In this document: one piece after another, positions 20,258-40,418 of the stretch
How the letters are laid out: the number at the start of each line of letters is the position of its first letter
How positions within the stretch are numbered: position 1 is the first letter of the stretch
NCBI GenBank assembly: GCA_002269645.1
Contig: NIVC01003207.1
Span: 1-64,000, forward strand
DNA from: Macrostomum lignano
Taxonomy: Eukaryota
DNA length: 64,000 bases
Reading direction: 5' to 3'
The notes under the pieces: model-generated
What the model was told of the DNA's origin: nothing
The model's database searches: none
Seen by the model: only the letters and a program-made list of their open reading frames with translations
Made by a program: the position numbers and the translations under genes

Positions 20258-20584
20258 ATGCTGAAGTCTGATACTGACAGCTATAATTATTCCACCATTG
20301 ATGAGTCGATTGCTAGCACCGAGTCCACTCTGCGGTACTGCCTGTGGAAGAAGGTGAGCCGCGATTGGGCTGGCTGGAGCTGGGGAGAGGGAGCGGAAGA
20401 GGGAATAGAGAGAAAGGGGAAGGGAAGAAATGAGAGAGGGAGAGGGTAGAGAGAGAGGGGAGGGTAGAGAGAGAGGGGGGAAGGTAGAGAGAGAGGGGAG
20501 GGTAGAGAGAGAGGGGGGAGGGCACAGAGAGAAAGGTGGGAGGGTAGAGAGGGGAGGGTAGAGAGGGGAGGGTAGAGAGGGAGG

Positions 20585-20653
<69 letters not shown>

Positions 20654-35800: not shown

Positions 35801-38800
35801 CATGTCTAGAAGTGGTGGTTGGTTTCCGTGTCTAGAAGTGGTGGTTGGTTTCCGTGTCTAGAAGTGGTTGGTTTTTTGTGTCTAGATGTAGCTGGTTTCC
35901 ATGTCTAGAAGTGGTGGTTTCCATGTCTAGAATTGGTGATTGGTTTCCGTAGCTTGAAGTGGTTGGTTTCCATAGATTGAAGTGGTTCGTTTCCGTAGAT
36001 TGAAGTGGTTGGTTTCCGTAGATTGAAGTGGTTGGTTTCCGTGTCTAGATTTAGTTAGTTTCCATGTCTATATGTAGTTGGTTTCCATGTCTAGAAGTAG
36101 CTGGTTTCCGTGTCTAGAAGTGGTGGTTTCCATGTCTAGAAGTGGTGATTGGTTTCCGTAGCTTGAAGTGGTTGGTTTCTATAGATTGAAGTGGTTGGTT
36201 TCCGTAGATTGAAGTGGTTGGTTTCCGTAGCTAGAAGTTGTTGGTTTCCGTAGCTAGAAGTAGTTGGTTTCCGTAGCTAGAAGTGGTTAACTTCCGTGTC
36301 TAGAAATGGCTGGTTTCCATAACTAGAAGAGAAAGCAGATGTTGGTTTCTGTCACGTGAATTGATCGGCTTCTTTTTCCAGAACTGCAGTCCTTTTTTAA
36401 AGTATTCGCTTACCGCATATCAAATTGGCAGCTTCGAAAGCTTTCCAAACTTACCGAAAGAGCAGAAAACCATTGAAATAAGAGAAAAACGGTCTTAACC
36501 ATAATCTCTGTGTTTGCAAAGCACCTGACTTACTGATTGCGACCCAATGCATTACCAACCCGCAGGTTCGCTTTGAAGATGCAGTTTGCGTCCAGCCGCA
36601 CACGATCCCGTTCTCGAATTTCACTCACCTGGTATTGGACGGCAGCTCCGAGTACCAGAGCATCGAATTCCCAGATGAACTCGAGCTGCCATACAGCGAG
36701 GAATTTCCGCAGTCGCTGGATTTGGTTAGTCACATCCTCATCAAATTGCAACTGTTGAAATCTGCCGGCGCGACTAGCGGCAAGAGAGCTTCAACGACCG
36801 TCCCAGGTAGTCAGTCACCCATAGCGTTCGGCTTGGACCACGGTGCGGCCATGCTGTGTCTGATGGATCCAGTGAAACAAACGGTGTCTGTAGGACGCAC
36901 AGTTCCAGAGACCGGTGGCTTTCTGTGCGAAACGAAGGTTGACCGCGTGCCGGATTTGGCTAAACTAAGCAGTGTACTGCTCAGGATGGAGACAGACTCG
37001 GTGCTGGTAAGTGGGGCTGCAATCTTGAGAGTATGATAGATACTTTAGAATGAGATTCTTGATGGAGTGGATTGAAAAATAAATAAAAGTGGATTGATGT
37101 GGTTGGATGGAGTAGATTAAGGTAGTTTGATGGAGTAGATTGGGATGGTTGGATGGAGTAGATAGGGTTGGTTGGACAGAGTAGATTGAGATGGTTGGAT
37201 GGAGTAGATTGAGATGGTTGGATAGAGTAGATTGGGATGGTTGGATGGAGTAGATTGGGATGGTTGGATGGAGTAGATTGGGATGGTTGGATGGAGTAGG
37301 TTGGGGTGGTTGGATGGAGTAGATTGAGATGGTTGGGTGGAGTAGGTTGGGGTGGTTGGATGGACTAGATTGAAGAGTTAAAATAAAATGAAATGAGCGA
37401 ATGATGCGGCTACGATTGGAATTCAAGTTGTCAGAAATCGCCTCGCACAAAAATGCTCCCCAAACTTCACCAGATTCTGCTGGACGGCAAACCGGTCTTA
37501 TCATACAACCTGTTAACGCGAAAGCACTACATCACCAGCTTCTTTATCGACGGCAATTTTCTGCTAAAAGACGTCGTCTGGAAAGAGAAACGAGCGCCAA
37601 AATGGACGCCACTGCCGCCAAGTTTTCAAGTTGGTCGGAGCATCCGCGTCTCTGGTCTGCTTCCGGAAGACGGACGAAGCGTCTGCTGCGTGGCCCTCAC
37701 AGTTGACGCCGCAGGAGCCCCCGAGTCGTCCAACGCCGCGTTCTGCCTGCGCTGCGAGCCGGGCCGTCAGCCGAGCGTCACCTCTTCGGCTCCGTCGGCC
37801 TCGTCAGCAACGATGCAACGCCCGCCGCTGCTACCGGGCCAGCGCTTCGAAGCGCACATCCTCTGCAAGCTGACTGGGTTCGAGGTGATGCTAGGCGATC
37901 TTGAAGCCGGCGTCTGCCAGGTGCCCCACGGTGTCGATCCGAGACAGTTGCGGTCGGTTCGACTCACTGGCGGAGCCGTATTCTACGAGGTTGACTTCCC
38001 TGACCAGCTGGGGCTGCCGTATTTGAATCGATTTCCAGTCAGCCTGAAGGAATCTCGATTTGTCACCGTGGACGTGGAATGCGGACTGCACGCCTCCAGG
38101 CCCAATACGTGAGTGCCAGTTCTGCAGCTGTCTCTTTTAACGTTTGGGTCGATCATAATTCTTCAAATTTCAATGAGAACTAAACCATCTGTTCAATTGA
38201 GAATCACGACTTTCACTAATCTATTGCAAAGATTCTACTCTAAGATTAAGATCTTATTGAGAATCGCCCTTCTGCCTCCTACGTAGACCCAGTAGACGTT
38301 CTTCGACCTGGTAGAAAATCAGCCATAAATTCCACATAGAGAATTACATCTTAAACCACGCTACAAACTACCCTTCAAAGATGCACCCAAATGCGAATTA
38401 AGGACACATGAAATTCTATAACTTTTCAGCTATAGTATTTCTACTATTAGTAGCAAATTCAGAAAACGTACACTTTTTGTCTTCCAAAACAGAATCAGCT
38501 TCGCTCTGTGCACCGGGCCAGGCGATGCCTGCCTGAAGCCGCTGGTCTGCGAGTTCAACATGGCCCAAGGCTACGCCTCAATGGCCTGGTCCAACCCGGC
38601 TGGCGAGCTCTGCGATGAGGATACGAAAAAGTTCGATCCCAGACTGGCCGGAGAAGTTGAAACTGTGGCCTTGCAAGCGACGGATTCGGACTACATTGTA
38701 AGTTTGAAGCAGTGCGGATCTTTGAATACCAGCTTAAAGGGCCTTGCAAACATCAGAACCTTGAAAACGTCAGCACCCTCGCTACACAAAAACCTTGACA

Positions 38801-40418
38801 ACTTAGGACATTGAGAACCCAGAAAATTGACAAACCCAGAATCTTGACAATTCTAAGATCCTTGGAATCCTTGGAAGGACCTTGACAATCCAGGATCCAG
38901 GACCTTGATAATCCAGGAACCAGGACAATCCAAGACCTTGACAATCCAGGACCTTAACAATCCAGGACCTTGACAATCCAGGACCTTGACAATCTAGGGC
39001 CTTAACAATCCAGGACCTTGACAATCTAGGGCCTTAACAATCCAGGAACCAGGACAATCCAAGACCTTGACAATCCAGGACCTTAACAATCCAGGACCTT
39101 GACAATCCAGGACCTTGACAATCTAGGGCCTTAACAATCCAGGACCTTGACAATCCACGACCTTGACAATCCAGGACCTTGACAATCCACGACCTTGACA
39201 ATCCACGACCTTGACAATCCACGACCTTGACAATCCACGACCTTGACAATCCAGGACCTTGACAATCCACGACCTTGACAATCCAGGACCTTGACAATCC
39301 AGTATCCAGGACCTTGATAATCCAGTATCCAGGACCTTGACAATCCACGACCTTGACAATCAAGCACCTTGACAATCCACGACCTTGATAATCCAGGACC
39401 TTGACAATCCACGACCTTGACAATCCACGACCTTGACAATCCACGACCTTGACAATCCACGAACTTGACAATCCAGGACCTTGACAATCCAGGACCTTGA
39501 CAATCCAGGACCTTGACAATCCAGGACCTTGACAATCCACGACCTTGACAATCCAGGACCTTGACAATCCACGACCTTGACAATCCAGGACCTTGATAAT
39601 CCACGACCTTGACAATCCACGACCTTGACAATCCACGACCTTGACAATCCACGACCTTGACAATCCAGGACCTTGATAATCCACGACCTTGACAATCCAC
39701 GACCTTGACAATCCACGACCTTGACAATCCAGGACCTTGACAATCCACGACCTTGACAATCCAGGACTTTGACAATCGAGGATATTGACATCCCAGGACC
39801 TTGACAAACCCAGTAGACTTGGGAGAAGTCAAAGTCTCGACCAAGAATCTATTGCAAATTTTGACTTTCCTATTTAATTTTTTCTAAATCCCATTCCATT
39901 TCGTCTATTTAGCTGTCAGTGAATGAGACGGCGGTGCTTAAATACCCGGTTCGACACAGTCTCGATGAAATTCAGTACGTCTTAATAGACGGCGACGTCT
40001 GCATCACCAGCGTGCAATTTGAAGGCAAGGTGAGAGCATCGTACGCAGGTGTTGTGTAGGCCAATTAAGAAACCTTCACCTCAAATTCTATAATTTCTAC
40101 AACCCCACAGCCCCCATATTCTACAACCCCACTCCTCACAGCCCCCCTCCCATATCCTACAACCCCACTCCCCACAGCCCCTATATTCTACAAACCCACT
40201 CCCCACAGCCCCATATTCTACAACCCCACTCCCACAGCCCCCATATTCTACAACCCCACTCCCCCACCACGCCATATTCTACAACCCGTCTGCCGTCTCT
40301 CACATTTAACAACTTATACGAGCTAAAAATAGCCATGCAGCCCTCTCAGCCAGAAATGATGCTCTAGATAATTTTGCAAACATTTCAGGCTGCCACTCCG
40401 AGCTGCTGCATCAACTAA
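20258..40418 (+). CDS. Giant multi-galectin-domain protein (five galectin-like folds plus a long disordered linker), about 2,180 codons, one unresolved frame break
   Basis: Exons: 20258-20353, 24712-24794, 25704-25950, 26286-26493, 26961-29066, 29758-30491, 32494-33773 (frame switch at 32832-32853), 34180-34274, 35395-35665, 36566-37006, 37474-38108, 38493-38697, 39913-40029, 40389-40418. Every junction is GT-AG and phase-consistent. Galectin-type segments include FTYDIPDGLIEGDCVEVKG...LSLDGDAEFTAVDF, PFVAHLPEPLRSGRRIIVSG...NGREWTSEQR and VLIDGDVCITSVQF. Additional or alternative exons cannot be excluded. Confidence 0.78.
20380..21206. repeat. GA-rich microsatellite/low-complexity tract including (GA)n runs
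   Basis: Almost pure purine strand, with (GA)n at about 20585-20647 and 20808-20891. Confidence 0.95.
21207..21520 (+). mobile_element. tRNA-derived SINE (degenerate)
   Basis: The head GGCTGTCGTCATTCAGTGGTCCAGCGCGG resembles an A-box. GGCTCGATTCC at 21259-21269 resembles a B-box at tRNA-like spacing. No cloverleaf or CCA context, so it is not a tRNA gene. The 3' boundary is uncertain. Confidence 0.5.
21990..24086. repeat. 23-bp minisatellite (CTGTCTAACAGTCCTGACACCCT), about 90 copies
   Basis: A 2.1-kb array with a few recurrent variant units. Confidence 0.97.
24852..25148. repeat. 14-bp minisatellite (GGACAGGTAGTCAC)
   Basis: Tandem units just after the exon ending at 24794. Confidence 0.88.
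26019..26228. repeat. 45-bp intronic repeat, about 4.5 copies
   Basis: TGTGTCAGTCGAGAGACAAGCTTGTGTCACATGCAGATCGGAGGT units. Confidence 0.88.
31316..31957 (-). pseudogene. FkbM-family (Methyltransf_21-like) methyltransferase fragment nested antisense in an intron
   Basis: The C-terminal half carries NVGGA...IVMKLDVEGGEADFL...VVQMEW...FFTSRGY, the typical FkbM K-x-D-V-E-G-x-E motif. No D-x-G-A-N SAM-binding motif is visible. It may be a truncated gene, or an exon of a gene whose other exons were not found. Confidence 0.6.
34330..35302. repeat. 18-bp minisatellite (TTCTAAATACCCCAGTCA)
   Basis: About 50 copies filling most of the intron 34275-35394. Confidence 0.95.
35770..36330. repeat. 23-26-bp minisatellite (GGTTTCCGTGTCTAGAAGTGGTT)
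   Basis: Degenerate tandem units in an intron. Confidence 0.88.
37085..37375. repeat. 23-bp minisatellite (GGATGGAGTAGATTGGGATGGTT)
   Basis: Tandem units in an intron. Confidence 0.88.
38790..39812. repeat. 16-bp minisatellite (CCTTGACAATCCA[G/C]GA)
   Basis: About 60 copies. They explain the repetitive minus-strand ORFs at 38753-39844. Confidence 0.95.
40097..40285. repeat. About 29-bp C-rich repeat (CCCCCATATTCTACAACCCCACTCCCACAG)
   Basis: About 6 copies in the last intron of the multi-galectin gene. Confidence 0.8.

What the first reader, a model, noticed from the sequence alone, without database searches (positions are those of the whole stretch)
20258..40418. Giant five-fold galectin-like protein with degenerate sugar-binding sites: a candidate non-lectin scaffold
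Splicing yields one galectin fold, a roughly 1,350-aa Gln/Ser/Lys-rich disordered linker, then four tandem galectin folds, with no signal peptide. The canonical H-x-N-x-R motif is absent from all five folds. Only fold 2 keeps W-x-x-E-x-R (WTSEQR). Commonly described galectins have 1, 2 or (in molluscs) 4 CRDs with short linkers. I do not recognise this 1+IDR+4 architecture.
Basis: partly seen in the sequence, partly recalled or inferred. Interest (0 to 1): 0.8.

Follow-up and report, generated by a model that had tools for sequence, protein, structure and literature searches.

The report
Giant five-domain galectin-like flatworm protein
The window holds a real, transcribed gene of the flatworm Macrostomum lignano. 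Its protein has one galectin-like domain, a roughly 1,000-1,400-residue disordered stretch, then four more galectin-like domains, all lacking the usual sugar-binding residues. It is an unusual but already partly annotated, uncharacterised variant of a well-known protein family.

Summary
The window is the first 64 kb of Macrostomum lignano contig NIVC01003207.1.

**Gene model.** 13-14 GT-AG exons run from the ATG at 20258 to the stop at 40416-40418. They encode 1,755 aa, or 2,182 aa if cassette exon 7 is included.

**Domains.**
- Five galectin-like beta-sandwiches are present.
- Pfam PF00337 detects folds 1, 2, 4 and 5.
- Fold 3 is supported by hhalign (92.8 %) and by AlphaFold/Foldseek (TM about 0.7-0.8 to galectin CRDs).
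- H-x-N-x-R is absent from the whole protein. WTSEQR in fold 2 is the only W-x-x-E-x-R.
- There is no signal peptide or transmembrane segment.

**One gene.**
- GenBank PAA47915.1 is an RNA-seq-derived model from a 98-99 % identical sister copy. It joins fold 1, the linker and the four folds in one ORF.
- Paralogue models confirm the exon 1/2 and exon 4/5 junctions.
- The local public model, PAA52624.1, is 5'-truncated by a non-canonical pseudo-intron.

**Constraint and relatives.**
- The fold exons are under purifying selection (19 synonymous : 7 non-synonymous differences).
- Two diverged M. lignano paralogue lineages keep the same degenerate four-fold block.
- The four-fold block aligns domain for domain with spiralian four-CRD galectins.

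**Function and novelty.** A non-lectin multivalent scaffold is a reasonable but untested inference. Novelty is moderate: a new architectural variant of a known kind, already deposited as a "hypothetical / galectin domain-containing protein".

The parts
20258..20353 (+). Exon 1: start codon and 32-aa polar N-terminal extension (MLKSDTDSYNYSTIDESIASTESTLRYCLWKK), donor AAG|GTGAGC
   Evidence: It is the only ATG-initiated ORF upstream of exon 2 that ends in a phase-0 consensus donor and is longer than 5 codons. All 3 differences from sister copy L003 are synonymous. Paralogue P0021 reads ..KYCLWKKGTQFTYDIPDGL.. across the exon 1/2 junction.
24712..26393 (+). Galectin-like fold 1, split over exon 2 (24712-24794), exon 3 (25704-25950) and the first part of exon 4 (26286-26393)
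   Evidence: Pfam PF00337 scores 28.4 bits over profile positions 1-131. It gives weak phmmer hits to galectin-3 CRD structures. UniProt names the 99 % identical P0020 'Galectin'.
26394..30491 (+). Disordered linker, constitutive part: exon 4 tail (26394-26493), exon 5 (26961-29066) and exon 6 (29758-30491). Together 980 aa rich in S, Q, A, P, K, E and R
   Evidence: Continuous ORFs with phase-consistent GT-AG junctions. No Pfam domain. Composition: S 13 %, Q 12 %, 16 % hydrophobic, 28 % charged. The same exon chain is present in PAA47915.1. The exon 4/5 junction motif IVPKKFRKQ is conserved as ILPKKVKEQ in paralogue P0021.
32494..33773 (+). Exon 7: a candidate phase 0-0 cassette exon (427 codons of further disordered linker, ending in RRSRRRLRRLRRQRRNSLRRRK). 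It is frameshifted in this copy by a missing C at 32840/41. An alternative acceptor lies at 32524
   Evidence: Sister copies L002 and L003 have TACCCCGAGG where the window has TACCCGAGG, and read as one 511-512-codon ORF. It is homologous to the pre-fold region of paralogue P0002 (LFRRSKSYSLEQ.., GTYRP, HSSFFRARS). All three RNA-seq-based public models skip it.
34180..36670 (+). Galectin-like fold 2: exon 8 (34180-34274), exon 9 (35395-35665) and the start of exon 10 (36566-36670). Contains WTSEQR
   Evidence: Pfam PF00337 scores 30.0 bits over profile positions 1-131. The AlphaFold four-fold model shows it as all-beta. Its intron positions and phases match those of fold 1.
36671..37581 (+). 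Galectin-like fold 3: the rest of exon 10 (36671-37006) and the start of exon 11 (37474-37581). It is the most divergent fold and carries FLCETK in place of W-x-x-E-x-R
   Evidence: No Pfam hit. hhalign against canonical CRDs gives 92.8 %, E 4e-7 over 131 columns. The AlphaFold model has pLDDT 83 and all of its top 50 Foldseek PDB hits are galectin CRDs.
37582..37998 (+). Galectin-like fold 4, lying entirely within exon 11
   Evidence: Pfam PF00337 scores 25.6-25.8 bits. Weak phmmer hits to galectin-7. It is a beta-sandwich in the AlphaFold model.
37999..40029 (+). Galectin-like fold 5: the end of exon 11 (37999-38108), exon 12 (38493-38697) and exon 13 (39913-40029)
   Evidence: Pfam PF00337 scores 24.7 bits for the C-terminal half. 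It is the best PDB sequence match of the protein, to Toxascaris leonina galectin (E 7e-7). Its intron positions and phases match folds 1 and 2.
40389..40418 (+). Exon 14: a 9-aa Cys-containing tail AATPSCCIN plus the stop codon
   Evidence: Donor AAG|GTGAGA at 40030 and acceptor TTTCAG|G at 40388. The public models P0001, P0013, P0014 and P0003 all use it. Paralogues end ..FSTCN or ..FCGICCQ...

Best explanation
**What it is.** This is one protein-coding gene of Macrostomum lignano. It belongs to transcript cluster Mlig013397/Mlig025793. It encodes a cytoplasmic or nuclear (non-secretory-pathway) protein of about 1,755 aa, or about 2,182 aa with cassette exon 7.

**Layout of the protein.**
- A short polar N-terminus.
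- One degenerate galectin-like beta-sandwich.
- About 1,000-1,400 aa of low-complexity disorder rich in S, Q, A, K, R and E.
- A compact block of four tandem degenerate galectin-like beta-sandwiches.
- A 9-residue Cys-containing tail.

**Origin (inferred).** The four-fold block descends from the four-CRD tandem-repeat galectin architecture of spiralians.

**Function (inferred).** Every fold lacks most of the His-Asn-Arg / Asn / Trp-Glu-Arg residues that hold beta-galactosides in canonical galectins. These losses are shared with paralogues while the folds stay under purifying selection. The domains therefore most likely no longer act as beta-galactoside lectins. They more likely serve as protein-binding or other non-canonical binding modules. 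The protein would then be a multivalent scaffold or cross-linker: a binding module at one end and four at the other, joined by a long flexible, possibly condensate-forming tether.

**Shown versus inferred.**
- Shown: gene structure, folds, motif loss, selective constraint, and transcription (through the RNA-seq-derived public models).
- Inferred: loss of sugar binding, the scaffold role, and any membrane attachment through the C-terminal cysteines.
For: **Exons.** The model has all GT-AG introns and consistent phases.

**One ORF.**
- PAA47915.1 is a 1,637-aa partial model from the 98-99 % identical copy L002. It runs from the end of exon 3 through exons 4, 5 and 6 into exons 8-14.
- GenBank models of this assembly are RNA-seq/StringTie/TACO transcripts. 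They are cut at experimentally mapped trans-splice and poly(A) sites, and their ORFs come from TransDecoder (PMC5730564).

**The local public model is 5'-truncated by an artefact.**
- Its first 'intron' is non-canonical (CC..AG).
- That position coincides with an in-frame 69-nt deletion in the sister copy.
- The window's exon 5 is an intact 702-codon ORF.

**Junctions.** Paralogue P0021 confirms exon 1/2 and exon 4/5. Exon 1 differs from copy L003 only by 3 synonymous changes.

**Folds.**

**Motif loss.** Paralogues at 57 % and 31 % identity keep the same four-fold block. Outside fold 2, where the 57 % paralogue reads WTAEER, none of their folds carries a full canonical motif.

**Constraint.**
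- Fold exons show 19 synonymous versus 7 non-synonymous codon differences from L002.
- Linker exon 5 shows 10 versus 16.
- Folds are 57 % identical between paralogues. The linkers are barely alignable apart from short motifs.

**Descent.**
- The block aligns domain for domain with the Lingula four-CRD galectin-4.
- The inter-domain motif PDELELPY is identical in Lingula LOC106170100.
- Known four-CRD galectins of molluscs are described in PMC7053492.

**Location.** No signal peptide or TM segment was found.
Against: - No transcript in hand covers exons 1-3 of this gene. The sister contig ends before exon 2. The paralogue models P0020 and P0021 come from gene predictions on an older assembly (my own knowledge of the UniProt A0A1I8 entries, not checked here).
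- The public model at this very locus starts inside exon 5. No gene is annotated over 20258-26493.
- M. lignano makes polycistronic precursors, so a transcript spanning both halves is not proof of one protein. The uninterrupted ORF is the stronger argument.
- Inclusion of exon 7 is unresolved.
- Fold 2 keeps W-x-x-E-x-R, fold 3 keeps F-x-x-E-x-K and fold 5 keeps an F-N. Some non-canonical glycan binding cannot be excluded.
- The AlphaFold alignments were shallow (7 rows) and included canonical Lingula CRDs, which may push the models towards the galectin fold.
- No expression, localisation or partner data were found.
Confidence: 0.62

Rival explanations
1. There are two adjacent genes, or a polycistronic precursor. 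One encodes fold 1 plus a disordered tail. The other encodes a disordered head plus four galectin-like folds. The 1+IDR+4 protein would then be an annotation artefact.
For: - The public model at this locus (PAA52624.1) starts inside exon 5 and lacks fold 1.
- If the exon 5 or exon 6 donors are ignored, stops follow at 29099-29101 and 30534-30536.
- An ATG sits at 32850 at the start of the frame-2 part of exon 7.
- About 7 % of M. lignano transcripts are multi-gene precursors.
- A minus-strand FkbM-like ORF lies between exons 6 and 7.
Against: - PAA47915.1 is one uninterrupted 1,637-aa ORF from fold 1 to the stop. It survived TBONE cutting at mapped trans-splice and poly(A) sites.
- The start of PAA52624.1 depends on a non-canonical CC..AG intron. 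That intron coincides with a deletion in the sister copy.
- All junctions e4/e5, e5/e6 and e6/e8 (or e6/e7/e8) are phase-compatible.
- The ATG at 32850 lies inside a continuous ORF in both sister copies and in paralogue P0002.
- No AATAAA or ATTAAA occurs within about 490 nt after the 30534-30536 stop.
Confidence: 0.1
2. It is still a lectin. One or more folds, above all fold 2 with WTSEQR, bind glycans through a modified or non-canonical site. The protein would then be a pentavalent glycan cross-linker, like mollusc four-CRD galectins but with a long spacer.
For: - Fold 2 keeps Trp, Glu and Arg of the S6 strand in this gene and in paralogue P0002 (WTAEER).
- Fold 3 keeps an aromatic residue, Glu and Lys (FLCETK).
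- The galectin fold itself is intact.
- Some galectins with altered sites still bind other sugars. Galectin-10 and mannose is an example from my own knowledge, not tested here.
Against: - The S4 triad His-Asn-Arg is missing from all five folds, and the S5 Asn is not evident in the alignments.
- Mutagenesis of canonical galectins shows these residues are required for beta-galactoside binding (established knowledge, not tested here).
- The more distant paralogue P0004 has lost even the fold 2 Trp and Arg (PVCEAK). That site is therefore not conserved across the family.
Confidence: 0.2
3. It is a decaying, non-functional duplicate in a highly duplicated genome. The degenerate motifs and scattered frameshifts would reflect pseudogenisation.
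For: - Each of the three near-identical copies carries at least one indel in a coding exon. The window has one in exon 7, L002 has two in exon 3, and L003 has several in exon 5.
- The Mlig_3_7 assembly is highly redundant.
Against: - The indels checked at base level are 1-nt changes in homopolymer runs (GG and GGGG in L002 exon 3, CCCC in the window's exon 7). They sit at different places in each copy, as expected from residual long-read errors. The L003 exon 5 indels were not inspected at base level.
- The window keeps a 1,755-codon ORF.
- Synonymous changes outnumber non-synonymous ones 19:7 in the fold exons.
- Paralogues at 57 % and 31 % identity keep open four-fold ORFs.
- The locus is transcribed, since the models derive from RNA-seq.
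Confidence: 0.05

Closest known systems
Spiralian four-CRD tandem-repeat galectins (oyster CvGal1/CvGal2, PMC7053492; Lingula anatina galectin-4 isoform X1, XP_023933621.1 = P0008)
   Same: - Four galectin folds in tandem with short linkers and no signal peptide.
- The Macrostomum four-fold block aligns domain for domain with the Lingula protein.
- The ..F-x-D-x-L-x-(L/M)-P-Y inter-domain junctions are shared.
- It is among the best non-Macrostomum sequence hits (E about 1e-9).
   Different: - The known proteins keep H-F-N-P-R and W-x-x-E-E-R in all four CRDs and bind galactosides. They score about 120 bits per domain in Pfam.
- The Macrostomum folds score 0-30 bits each and lack the motifs.
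- The Macrostomum protein adds a fifth N-terminal fold and a disordered region of about 1,000-1,400 aa.
Galectin-related proteins without lactose binding (vertebrate GRP/LGALSL, LGALSL2, GRIFIN; PMC10343441)
   Same: They have a galectin fold with substitutions at canonical sugar-contact positions. They are precedent for galectin folds retained for non-lectin roles.
   Different: They are single-domain proteins of about 15-20 kDa with no long disordered region. They are a different lineage with no specific sequence relationship to this protein. No vertebrate GRP appeared among the 12 hits.
Chimera-type galectin-3
   Same: It combines a galectin fold with a long intrinsically disordered low-complexity region. 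In galectin-3 that region drives self-association and phase separation (PMC7060198 and PMC12979664, listed).
   Different: - Galectin-3 has one functional CRD and an N-terminal Pro/Gly/Tyr-rich region of about 110 aa.
- Here the disordered region is ten times longer, rich in S, Q, K and R, and lies between folds.
- Here all the folds are degenerate.
Lingula anatina uncharacterised protein LOC106170100 (XP_013405296.1 = P0006)
   Same: - It has the same one fold + linker + tandem folds layout: CRD, about 110-aa linker, then two CRDs.
- The PDELELPY inter-domain motif is identical.
- Its H-x-N-x-R positions are substituted, by inspection of the sequence.
- Its tail is Cys-rich.
   Different: - It has only three folds and a short linker.
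- Its Pfam score is much stronger (262 bits for 3 domains).
- It ends in a textbook CaaX box (CVIM), whereas the Macrostomum protein ends SCCIN.
- Overall identity is only 25 %, so orthology is not established.
Predicted many-CRD galectins (Plakobranchus ocellatus GFO42857.1 with 5 CRDs; Bulinus truncatus KAH9489413.1 with 13; Gymnothorax javanicus KAJ8280297.1 with 10)
   Same: They show that five or more galectin folds in one predicted polypeptide is not unique.
   Different: - All are canonical, high-scoring CRDs with short linkers.
- None has a kilo-residue disordered region.
- They are unverified gene predictions.

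Membership tests
Galectin family (sensu Barondes et al. 1994: beta-galactoside affinity plus conserved CRD sequence elements) | Galectin-type beta-sandwich CRD fold | tested here: met
   Pfam PF00337 scores above the gathering cutoff for folds 1, 2, 4 and 5. For fold 3, hhalign gives 92.8 % and the AlphaFold/Foldseek model gives TM 0.63-0.81 to galectin CRDs. The four-fold model hits galectin-8, galectin-9 and the Toxascaris galectin at E about 1e-14.
Galectin family (sensu Barondes et al. 1994: beta-galactoside affinity plus conserved CRD sequence elements) | Signature residues H-x-N-x-R (S4), N (S5) and W-x-x-E-x-R (S6) | tested here: not met
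   No H.N.R occurs anywhere in the protein. The only W..E.R is WTSEQR in fold 2. Alignments to human and Lingula CRDs show substitutions at these positions in all five folds.
Galectin family (sensu Barondes et al. 1994: beta-galactoside affinity plus conserved CRD sequence elements) | Binding of beta-galactosides | not testable with these tools
   This needs recombinant protein with lactose or asialofetuin affinity assays, or a glycan array.
Galectin family (sensu Barondes et al. 1994: beta-galactoside affinity plus conserved CRD sequence elements) | No classical signal peptide | tested here: met
   The N-terminus is polar, with a highest 10-residue Kyte-Doolittle mean of 0.79. No 19-residue window exceeds 1.6.
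Galectin family (sensu Barondes et al. 1994: beta-galactoside affinity plus conserved CRD sequence elements) | Three-exon CRD gene structure with a large middle exon (S3-F4 type in invertebrates, PMC10343441) | tested here: met
   Folds 1, 2 and 5 are each split at the same two positions: phase 2 after ..G-x-x-x-x-K/T-R/T and phase 0 before the ..V/I-x-x-N/D/E.. strand. Fold 3 keeps the second intron and fold 4 has none. The comparison with published positions is by description only.
Four-CRD tandem-repeat galectins of Spiralia (CvGal1 type) | Four tandem CRDs joined by short linkers | tested here: met
   The C-terminal 597 aa form four consecutive folds joined by 3-12-residue linkers. They align one-to-one with Lingula galectin-4.
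Four-CRD tandem-repeat galectins of Spiralia (CvGal1 type) | All four CRDs keep the galactoside-contact residues | tested here: not met
   See the motif analysis. The contrast is CvGal1, described in PMC7053492.
Four-CRD tandem-repeat galectins of Spiralia (CvGal1 type) | The protein consists essentially of the four CRDs (about 60 kDa) | tested here: not met
   An additional N-terminal fold and a 980-1,407-aa linker precede the block.
Chimera-type galectin (galectin-3) | N-terminal Pro/Gly/Tyr-rich collagen-like disordered domain plus a single C-terminal functional CRD | tested here: not met
   The linker lies between folds and is rich in S, Q, A, P, K, E and R. It has G 3.8 % and Y 1.5 %. There are five folds and none is canonical.
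CaaX-prenylated proteins | C-terminal Cys-aliphatic-aliphatic-X box | tested here: inconclusive
   The tail is ..PSCCIN, which is formally C-C-I-N, with an unusual a1 (Cys) and X (Asn). Paralogues end ..STCN..STRN or ..FCGICCQMIQNRAKQLD. Only the Lingula relative has a canonical CVIM. No predictor or experiment was available.

The most novel reading that the evidence does not exclude
The Macrostomum proteins would be members of an unrecognised spiralian family of intracellular 'pseudo-galectins', possibly together with Lingula LOC106170100. In this family galectin folds have been repurposed as protein-binding modules. They are arranged as one fold + flexible tether + a tandem block, and attached to membranes through C-terminal cysteine lipidation. 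The kilo-residue disordered tether would drive condensate or lattice formation without glycans. One paralogue carries AHNAK-like repeats in its tether.
Probability: 0.15. Interest if true: 0.6.

Novelty: new variant of a known kind. Interest (0 to 1): 0.42.

Why it matters
Galectins are defined by sugar binding. A growing minority of galectin folds, such as GRP/LGALSL and GRIFIN, appear to work without it.

This gene has five such folds under purifying selection, no canonical binding site, and a tether of about 1,000-1,400 disordered residues. It sits in an animal where transgenesis and RNAi are established (PMC5730564). That makes it a tractable case for asking what a galectin fold does when it is not a lectin. 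It also bears on whether multivalency plus disorder can build glycan-independent assemblies.

There are two practical points:
- The public model at this locus (PAA52624.1) is 5'-truncated by a mapping artefact.
- The galectin-like family in M. lignano needs re-annotation.

The finding does not open a long-standing question. The family, the fold, multi-CRD layouts and degenerate CRDs are all known individually.

Tried and rejected
1. A word-indexed homology search with the 213-aa exon 11 segment found nothing, although the identical public protein exists. The exhaustive HMMER search was therefore used instead.
2. A profile search with the three paralogue lineages returned only the paralogues. 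No orthologue in another flatworm was found. The 12 hits are 4 M. lignano proteins plus proteins from Plakobranchus ocellatus, Bulinus truncatus, Lingula anatina (2), Conger conger and Gymnothorax javanicus. P0010 and P0011 were not looked up for source.
3. Genomic context of paralogues P0002-P0004 is not on record. I could not show that P0021 (fold 1 paralogue) and P0002 (four-fold paralogue) are two halves of one gene.
4. To reconcile the two reading frames around 32832-32850, I considered a 15-nt micro-exon (32494-32508 spliced to 32847) and a direct exon 6 to 32847 splice. Both were dropped once the two sister copies showed an extra C that makes one continuous exon.
5. I considered the N-terminus of PAA52624.1 (MQSLLKRRKCNRALNSN...) as a real start. 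It was rejected because its intron is CC..AG and sits exactly where the sister copy has an in-frame deletion.
6. I considered the exon 13 read-through ending ..GKVRASYAGVV* at 40057-40059. The spliced ending AATPSCCIN is preferred. All public models use it, and its final asparagine and upstream cysteine recur in paralogue P0002 (..FSTCN).
8. Expression and phenotype look-ups for Mlig013397 and Mlig025793 in full texts and supplements found nothing.
9. Rfam found no RNA family in the window.

Full report
**Source and setting.** The 100 % self-hit of the exhaustive protein search (P0001 = GenBank PAA52624.1, BOX15_Mlig013397g1) lies on contig NIVC01003207.1 of assembly GCA_002269645.1, Macrostomum lignano. 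Its gene ends at record position 40418. Window coordinates therefore equal contig coordinates. The window is typical metazoan DNA. It holds:
- chimaerin-like SH2/C1/RhoGAP exons;
- a THAP/P-element-type transposase;
- a gypsy-type retroelement;
- a MACPF gene;
- many minisatellites.

**Gene model.** Reading the + strand between 20258 and 40418, I found 13 constitutive exons plus one candidate cassette exon. All have GT..AG introns and compatible phases.

| Exon | Coordinates |
|---|---|
| e1 | 20258-20353 |
| e2 | 24712-24794 |
| e3 | 25704-25950 |
| e4 | 26286-26493 |
| e5 | 26961-29066 |
| e6 | 29758-30491 |
| e7 (cassette) | 32494-33773 |
| e8 | 34180-34274 |
| e9 | 35395-35665 |
| e10 | 36566-37006 |
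| e11 | 37474-38108 |
| e12 | 38493-38697 |
| e13 | 39913-40029 |
| e14 | 40389-40418 |

Without e7 the ORF is 1,755 codons. With e7 and one restored C it is 2,182 codons.

**Are the five folds real?**
- Pfam PF00337 scores above its 22.1-bit gathering cutoff for fold 1 (28.4), fold 2 (30.0), fold 4 (25.6) and the C-terminal half of fold 5 (24.7). The four-fold block as a whole scores 73 bits.
- PDB sequence searches return only galectins, apart from one marginal immunoglobulin light-chain hit at E 0.6.
- Fold 3 has no Pfam hit. A small profile of fold 3 from the paralogues matches a profile of 13 canonical CRDs over the full domain (hhalign probability 92.8 %, E 4e-7).
- An AlphaFold model of fold 3 alone (pLDDT 83, pTM 0.77) retrieves only galectin CRDs in the top 50 PDB matches, with TM 0.63-0.81 and rmsd 2.4-4.5 A.
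- The model of all four C-terminal folds (pLDDT 75, pTM 0.61) is all-beta. It best matches tandem-repeat galectins-8 and -9 and the Toxascaris leonina galectin (E about 1e-14).
- Caveat: both alignments were shallow and contained canonical Lingula CRDs, which may bias the models towards the galectin fold.
- Independent support comes from gene structure. Folds 1, 2 and 5 are split by introns at the same two positions and phases, and fold 3 keeps the second one. This fits the three-exon CRD structure described for invertebrate galectins (PMC10343441).

**Motifs.**
- No H-x-N-x-R exists anywhere in the protein. The only W-x-x-E-x-R is WTSEQR in fold 2, and fold 3 has FLCETK.
- Alignments with human galectins-1, -3 and -7, and domain for domain with the Lingula four-CRD galectin (which has HFNPR and W..EER in every CRD), show substitutions at the S4 triad in all five folds.
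- There is no signal peptide or TM-like segment.

**One gene or two?** Three near-identical genomic copies exist: the window, L002 on NIVC01004292.1, and L003 on NIVC01005119.1. They are 97-99.6 % identical outside the repeat arrays.
- The GenBank model on L002, PAA47915.1 (1,637 aa, 5'-partial), is a single ORF. It runs from the end of e3 through e4, e5 and e6 directly into e8-e14.
- GenBank models of this assembly are not ab initio predictions. They are RNA-seq/StringTie/TACO transcripts, cut at experimentally mapped trans-splice and poly(A) sites, with TransDecoder ORFs (PMC5730564). This is transcript-level support for fold 1, the linker and the four folds being one message with one ORF.
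- That model is partial for two reasons. The contig ends about 780 nt upstream of the model's start, before e2. Two 1-nt homopolymer deletions in e3 also break the frame there.
- The model at the window's own locus (PAA52624.1, 1,122 aa) starts with MQSLLKRRKCNRALNSN in another frame inside e5. It then crosses an 85-nt 'intron' with CC..AG ends, exactly where L002 has an in-frame 69-nt deletion. I read this as a mapping artefact that truncated the ORF call. The window's e5 is an intact 702-codon exon.
- The N-terminal exons are supported in three ways:
  - e1 is the only ATG-initiated ORF upstream of e2 with a phase-0 consensus donor and more than 5 codons.
  - Its three differences from L003 are all synonymous.
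  - A 42 %-identical M. lignano paralogue model (P0021) reads ..KYCLWKK|GTQFTYDIPDGLIEGDCVE.. across e1/e2 and ..ILPKKVKEQ.. across e4/e5.

**Exon 7.** In the window, a frame-0 ORF (32446-32850) and a frame-2 ORF (32832-33980) overlap.
- Both sister copies have one more C (TACCCCGAGG versus TACCCGAGG at 32840/41). They read as one 511-512-codon ORF.
- This ORF is homologous to the region just upstream of the four folds in the 58 %-identical paralogue P0002 (LFRRSKSYSLEQ.., GTYRP.., HSSFFRARS).
- With the acceptor at 32494 (or 32524) and the donor at 33773, the exon is phase 0-0. Inclusion and skipping both keep the frame.
- All three RNA-based models skip it.
- The linker is therefore 980 aa (skipped) or 1,407 aa (included).

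**Is it functional?**
- Against L002, the fold-coding exons show 19 synonymous and 7 non-synonymous codon differences. Four or five of the seven lie in the low-confidence loop of fold 3.
- The linker exon e5 shows 10 synonymous and 16 non-synonymous differences.
- Two further paralogue lineages in M. lignano (P0002/P0015 at 57 %, P0004/P0016 at 31 % identity) keep a long disordered head plus the same four-fold block. Outside fold 2 of P0002 (WTAEER), none of their folds carries a full canonical motif. Their linkers have diverged almost beyond alignment.
- The folds are thus conserved as folds, without the sugar-binding signature.

**Relatives outside Macrostomum.**
- The exhaustive phmmer search of 1.84 billion representatives gave only 12 hits at E <= 1e-3. 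Four are M. lignano proteins. The rest include multi-CRD galectins of molluscs (Plakobranchus, Bulinus), a brachiopod (Lingula) and fish. No protein from another flatworm was identified among them. Two weak hits (P0010, P0011) were not looked up for source.
- The closest architectural relatives are the spiralian four-CRD galectins. The type is known from oysters (PMC7053492).
- Lingula LOC106170100 is an uncharacterised protein with one CRD, a 110-aa linker, two CRDs, an identical PDELELPY inter-domain motif and a CaaX tail.
- Predicted galectins with 5, 10 and 13 canonical CRDs exist, so the number five alone is not special.

**How it most likely works.**
- Shown: a transcribed gene for a non-secretory-pathway protein. 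It has five constrained galectin-fold domains lacking the canonical contact residues, and a 1,000-1,400-aa low-complexity linker. The linker is 13 % S, 12 % Q, 28 % charged and 16 % hydrophobic, and carries basic clusters such as RRLRRLRRQRRNSLRRRK in e7.
- Inferred: loss of beta-galactoside binding. This rests on established mutagenesis and structural knowledge of the His-Asn-Arg / Asn / Trp-Glu-Arg site and is not tested here.
- Inferred: use of the folds as protein-binding or other non-canonical binding modules. The result would be a multivalent scaffold with a flexible tether, possibly self-associating.
- Speculative: membrane attachment through the C-terminal cysteines (SCCIN). The only hints are Cys-rich tails in paralogues and a true CaaX box in the Lingula relative.

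**Verdict.**
The architecture and degeneracy are real. The scaffold function is untested.
- The gene is already deposited, though mis-modelled and unnamed, and one public model already shows most of the architecture. No paper on it was found.
- It is a new architectural variant of a known kind and of moderate interest.

Noticed in passing
window 41977-45519 (ORF 42451-45276, + strand): An intact 941-aa ORF carries THAP, TNP-like RNase H and GTP-binding insertion domains, i.e. a P-element/THAP9-type transposase. The segment of about 3.5 kb is absent from the otherwise 97-98 % identical sister copy L002. It is therefore an insertion difference between gene copies and possibly a recently active DNA transposon.
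   Followed up: partly
window 32840/32841; L002 exon 3; L003 exon 5: Each of the three near-identical copies of the gene carries indels in a different coding exon. The window has C3 instead of C4 in exon 7. L002 has two 1-nt homopolymer deletions in exon 3. L003 has several indels in exon 5. The scatter suggests residual long-read assembly errors that have distorted the public ORF calls.
   Followed up: partly
window 28185-28269: The public gene model PAA52624.1 uses a non-canonical CC..AG 'intron' inside exon 5. It sits exactly where the sister copy has a 69-nt in-frame deletion. This is probably a cross-copy transcript-mapping artefact that truncates the annotated protein to 1,122 aa.
   Followed up: yes
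window 31316-31957, minus strand (inside intron 6): A 213-aa ORF has a C-terminal part matching the second half of the FkbM methyltransferase domain (PF05050, 27 bits). It is not annotated as a gene. It may be a fragment, a pseudogene or one exon of a nested gene.
   Followed up: no
paralogue protein P0021 (UniProt A0A1I8GPI7), residues about 300-380: The disordered region after fold 1 of this paralogue consists of repeats of the KGPKVKGPDVDIDV.. / KKPDVDIDVKGPK.. type. From memory these resemble the central repeats of the giant scaffold protein AHNAK. This was not tested.
   Followed up: no
window 50551-54341 (+), within the MACPF gene that starts near 45921: Gag/protease/RT and RNase H/integrase ORFs of a gypsy-type LTR retroelement lie here. 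The element is shared at 99.3 % identity with copy L002. It sits inside the span of an annotated 769-aa MACPF-domain gene.
   Followed up: no
window 19000-19629, 20406-21207, 21989-24087, 24845-25123, 26019-26227, 34331-35302, 35765-36329, 37100-37372, 38895-39807, 40103-40287: One array lies just upstream of the gene (19000-19629) and the others fill its introns. Periods are 14-47 nt and copy numbers reach about 90. Several arrays differ in length between the three gene copies. They create long spurious ORFs on both strands.
   Followed up: partly
window 11794-15574 (+) and 60553-60984 (+): A chimaerin-like gene (SH2, C1 and RhoGAP exons) lies upstream. An ORF with an F5/8 type C / NedA-like galactose-binding domain lies downstream. 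Both are unrelated to the finding.
   Followed up: no
protein P0006 (Lingula anatina XP_013405296.1): This uncharacterised brachiopod protein has three galectin domains whose H-x-N-x-R positions are substituted, a 110-aa internal linker and a C-terminal ..SCCPVCVGCVIM tail (a CaaX box). It may be a lipid-anchored galectin-like protein.
   Followed up: partly
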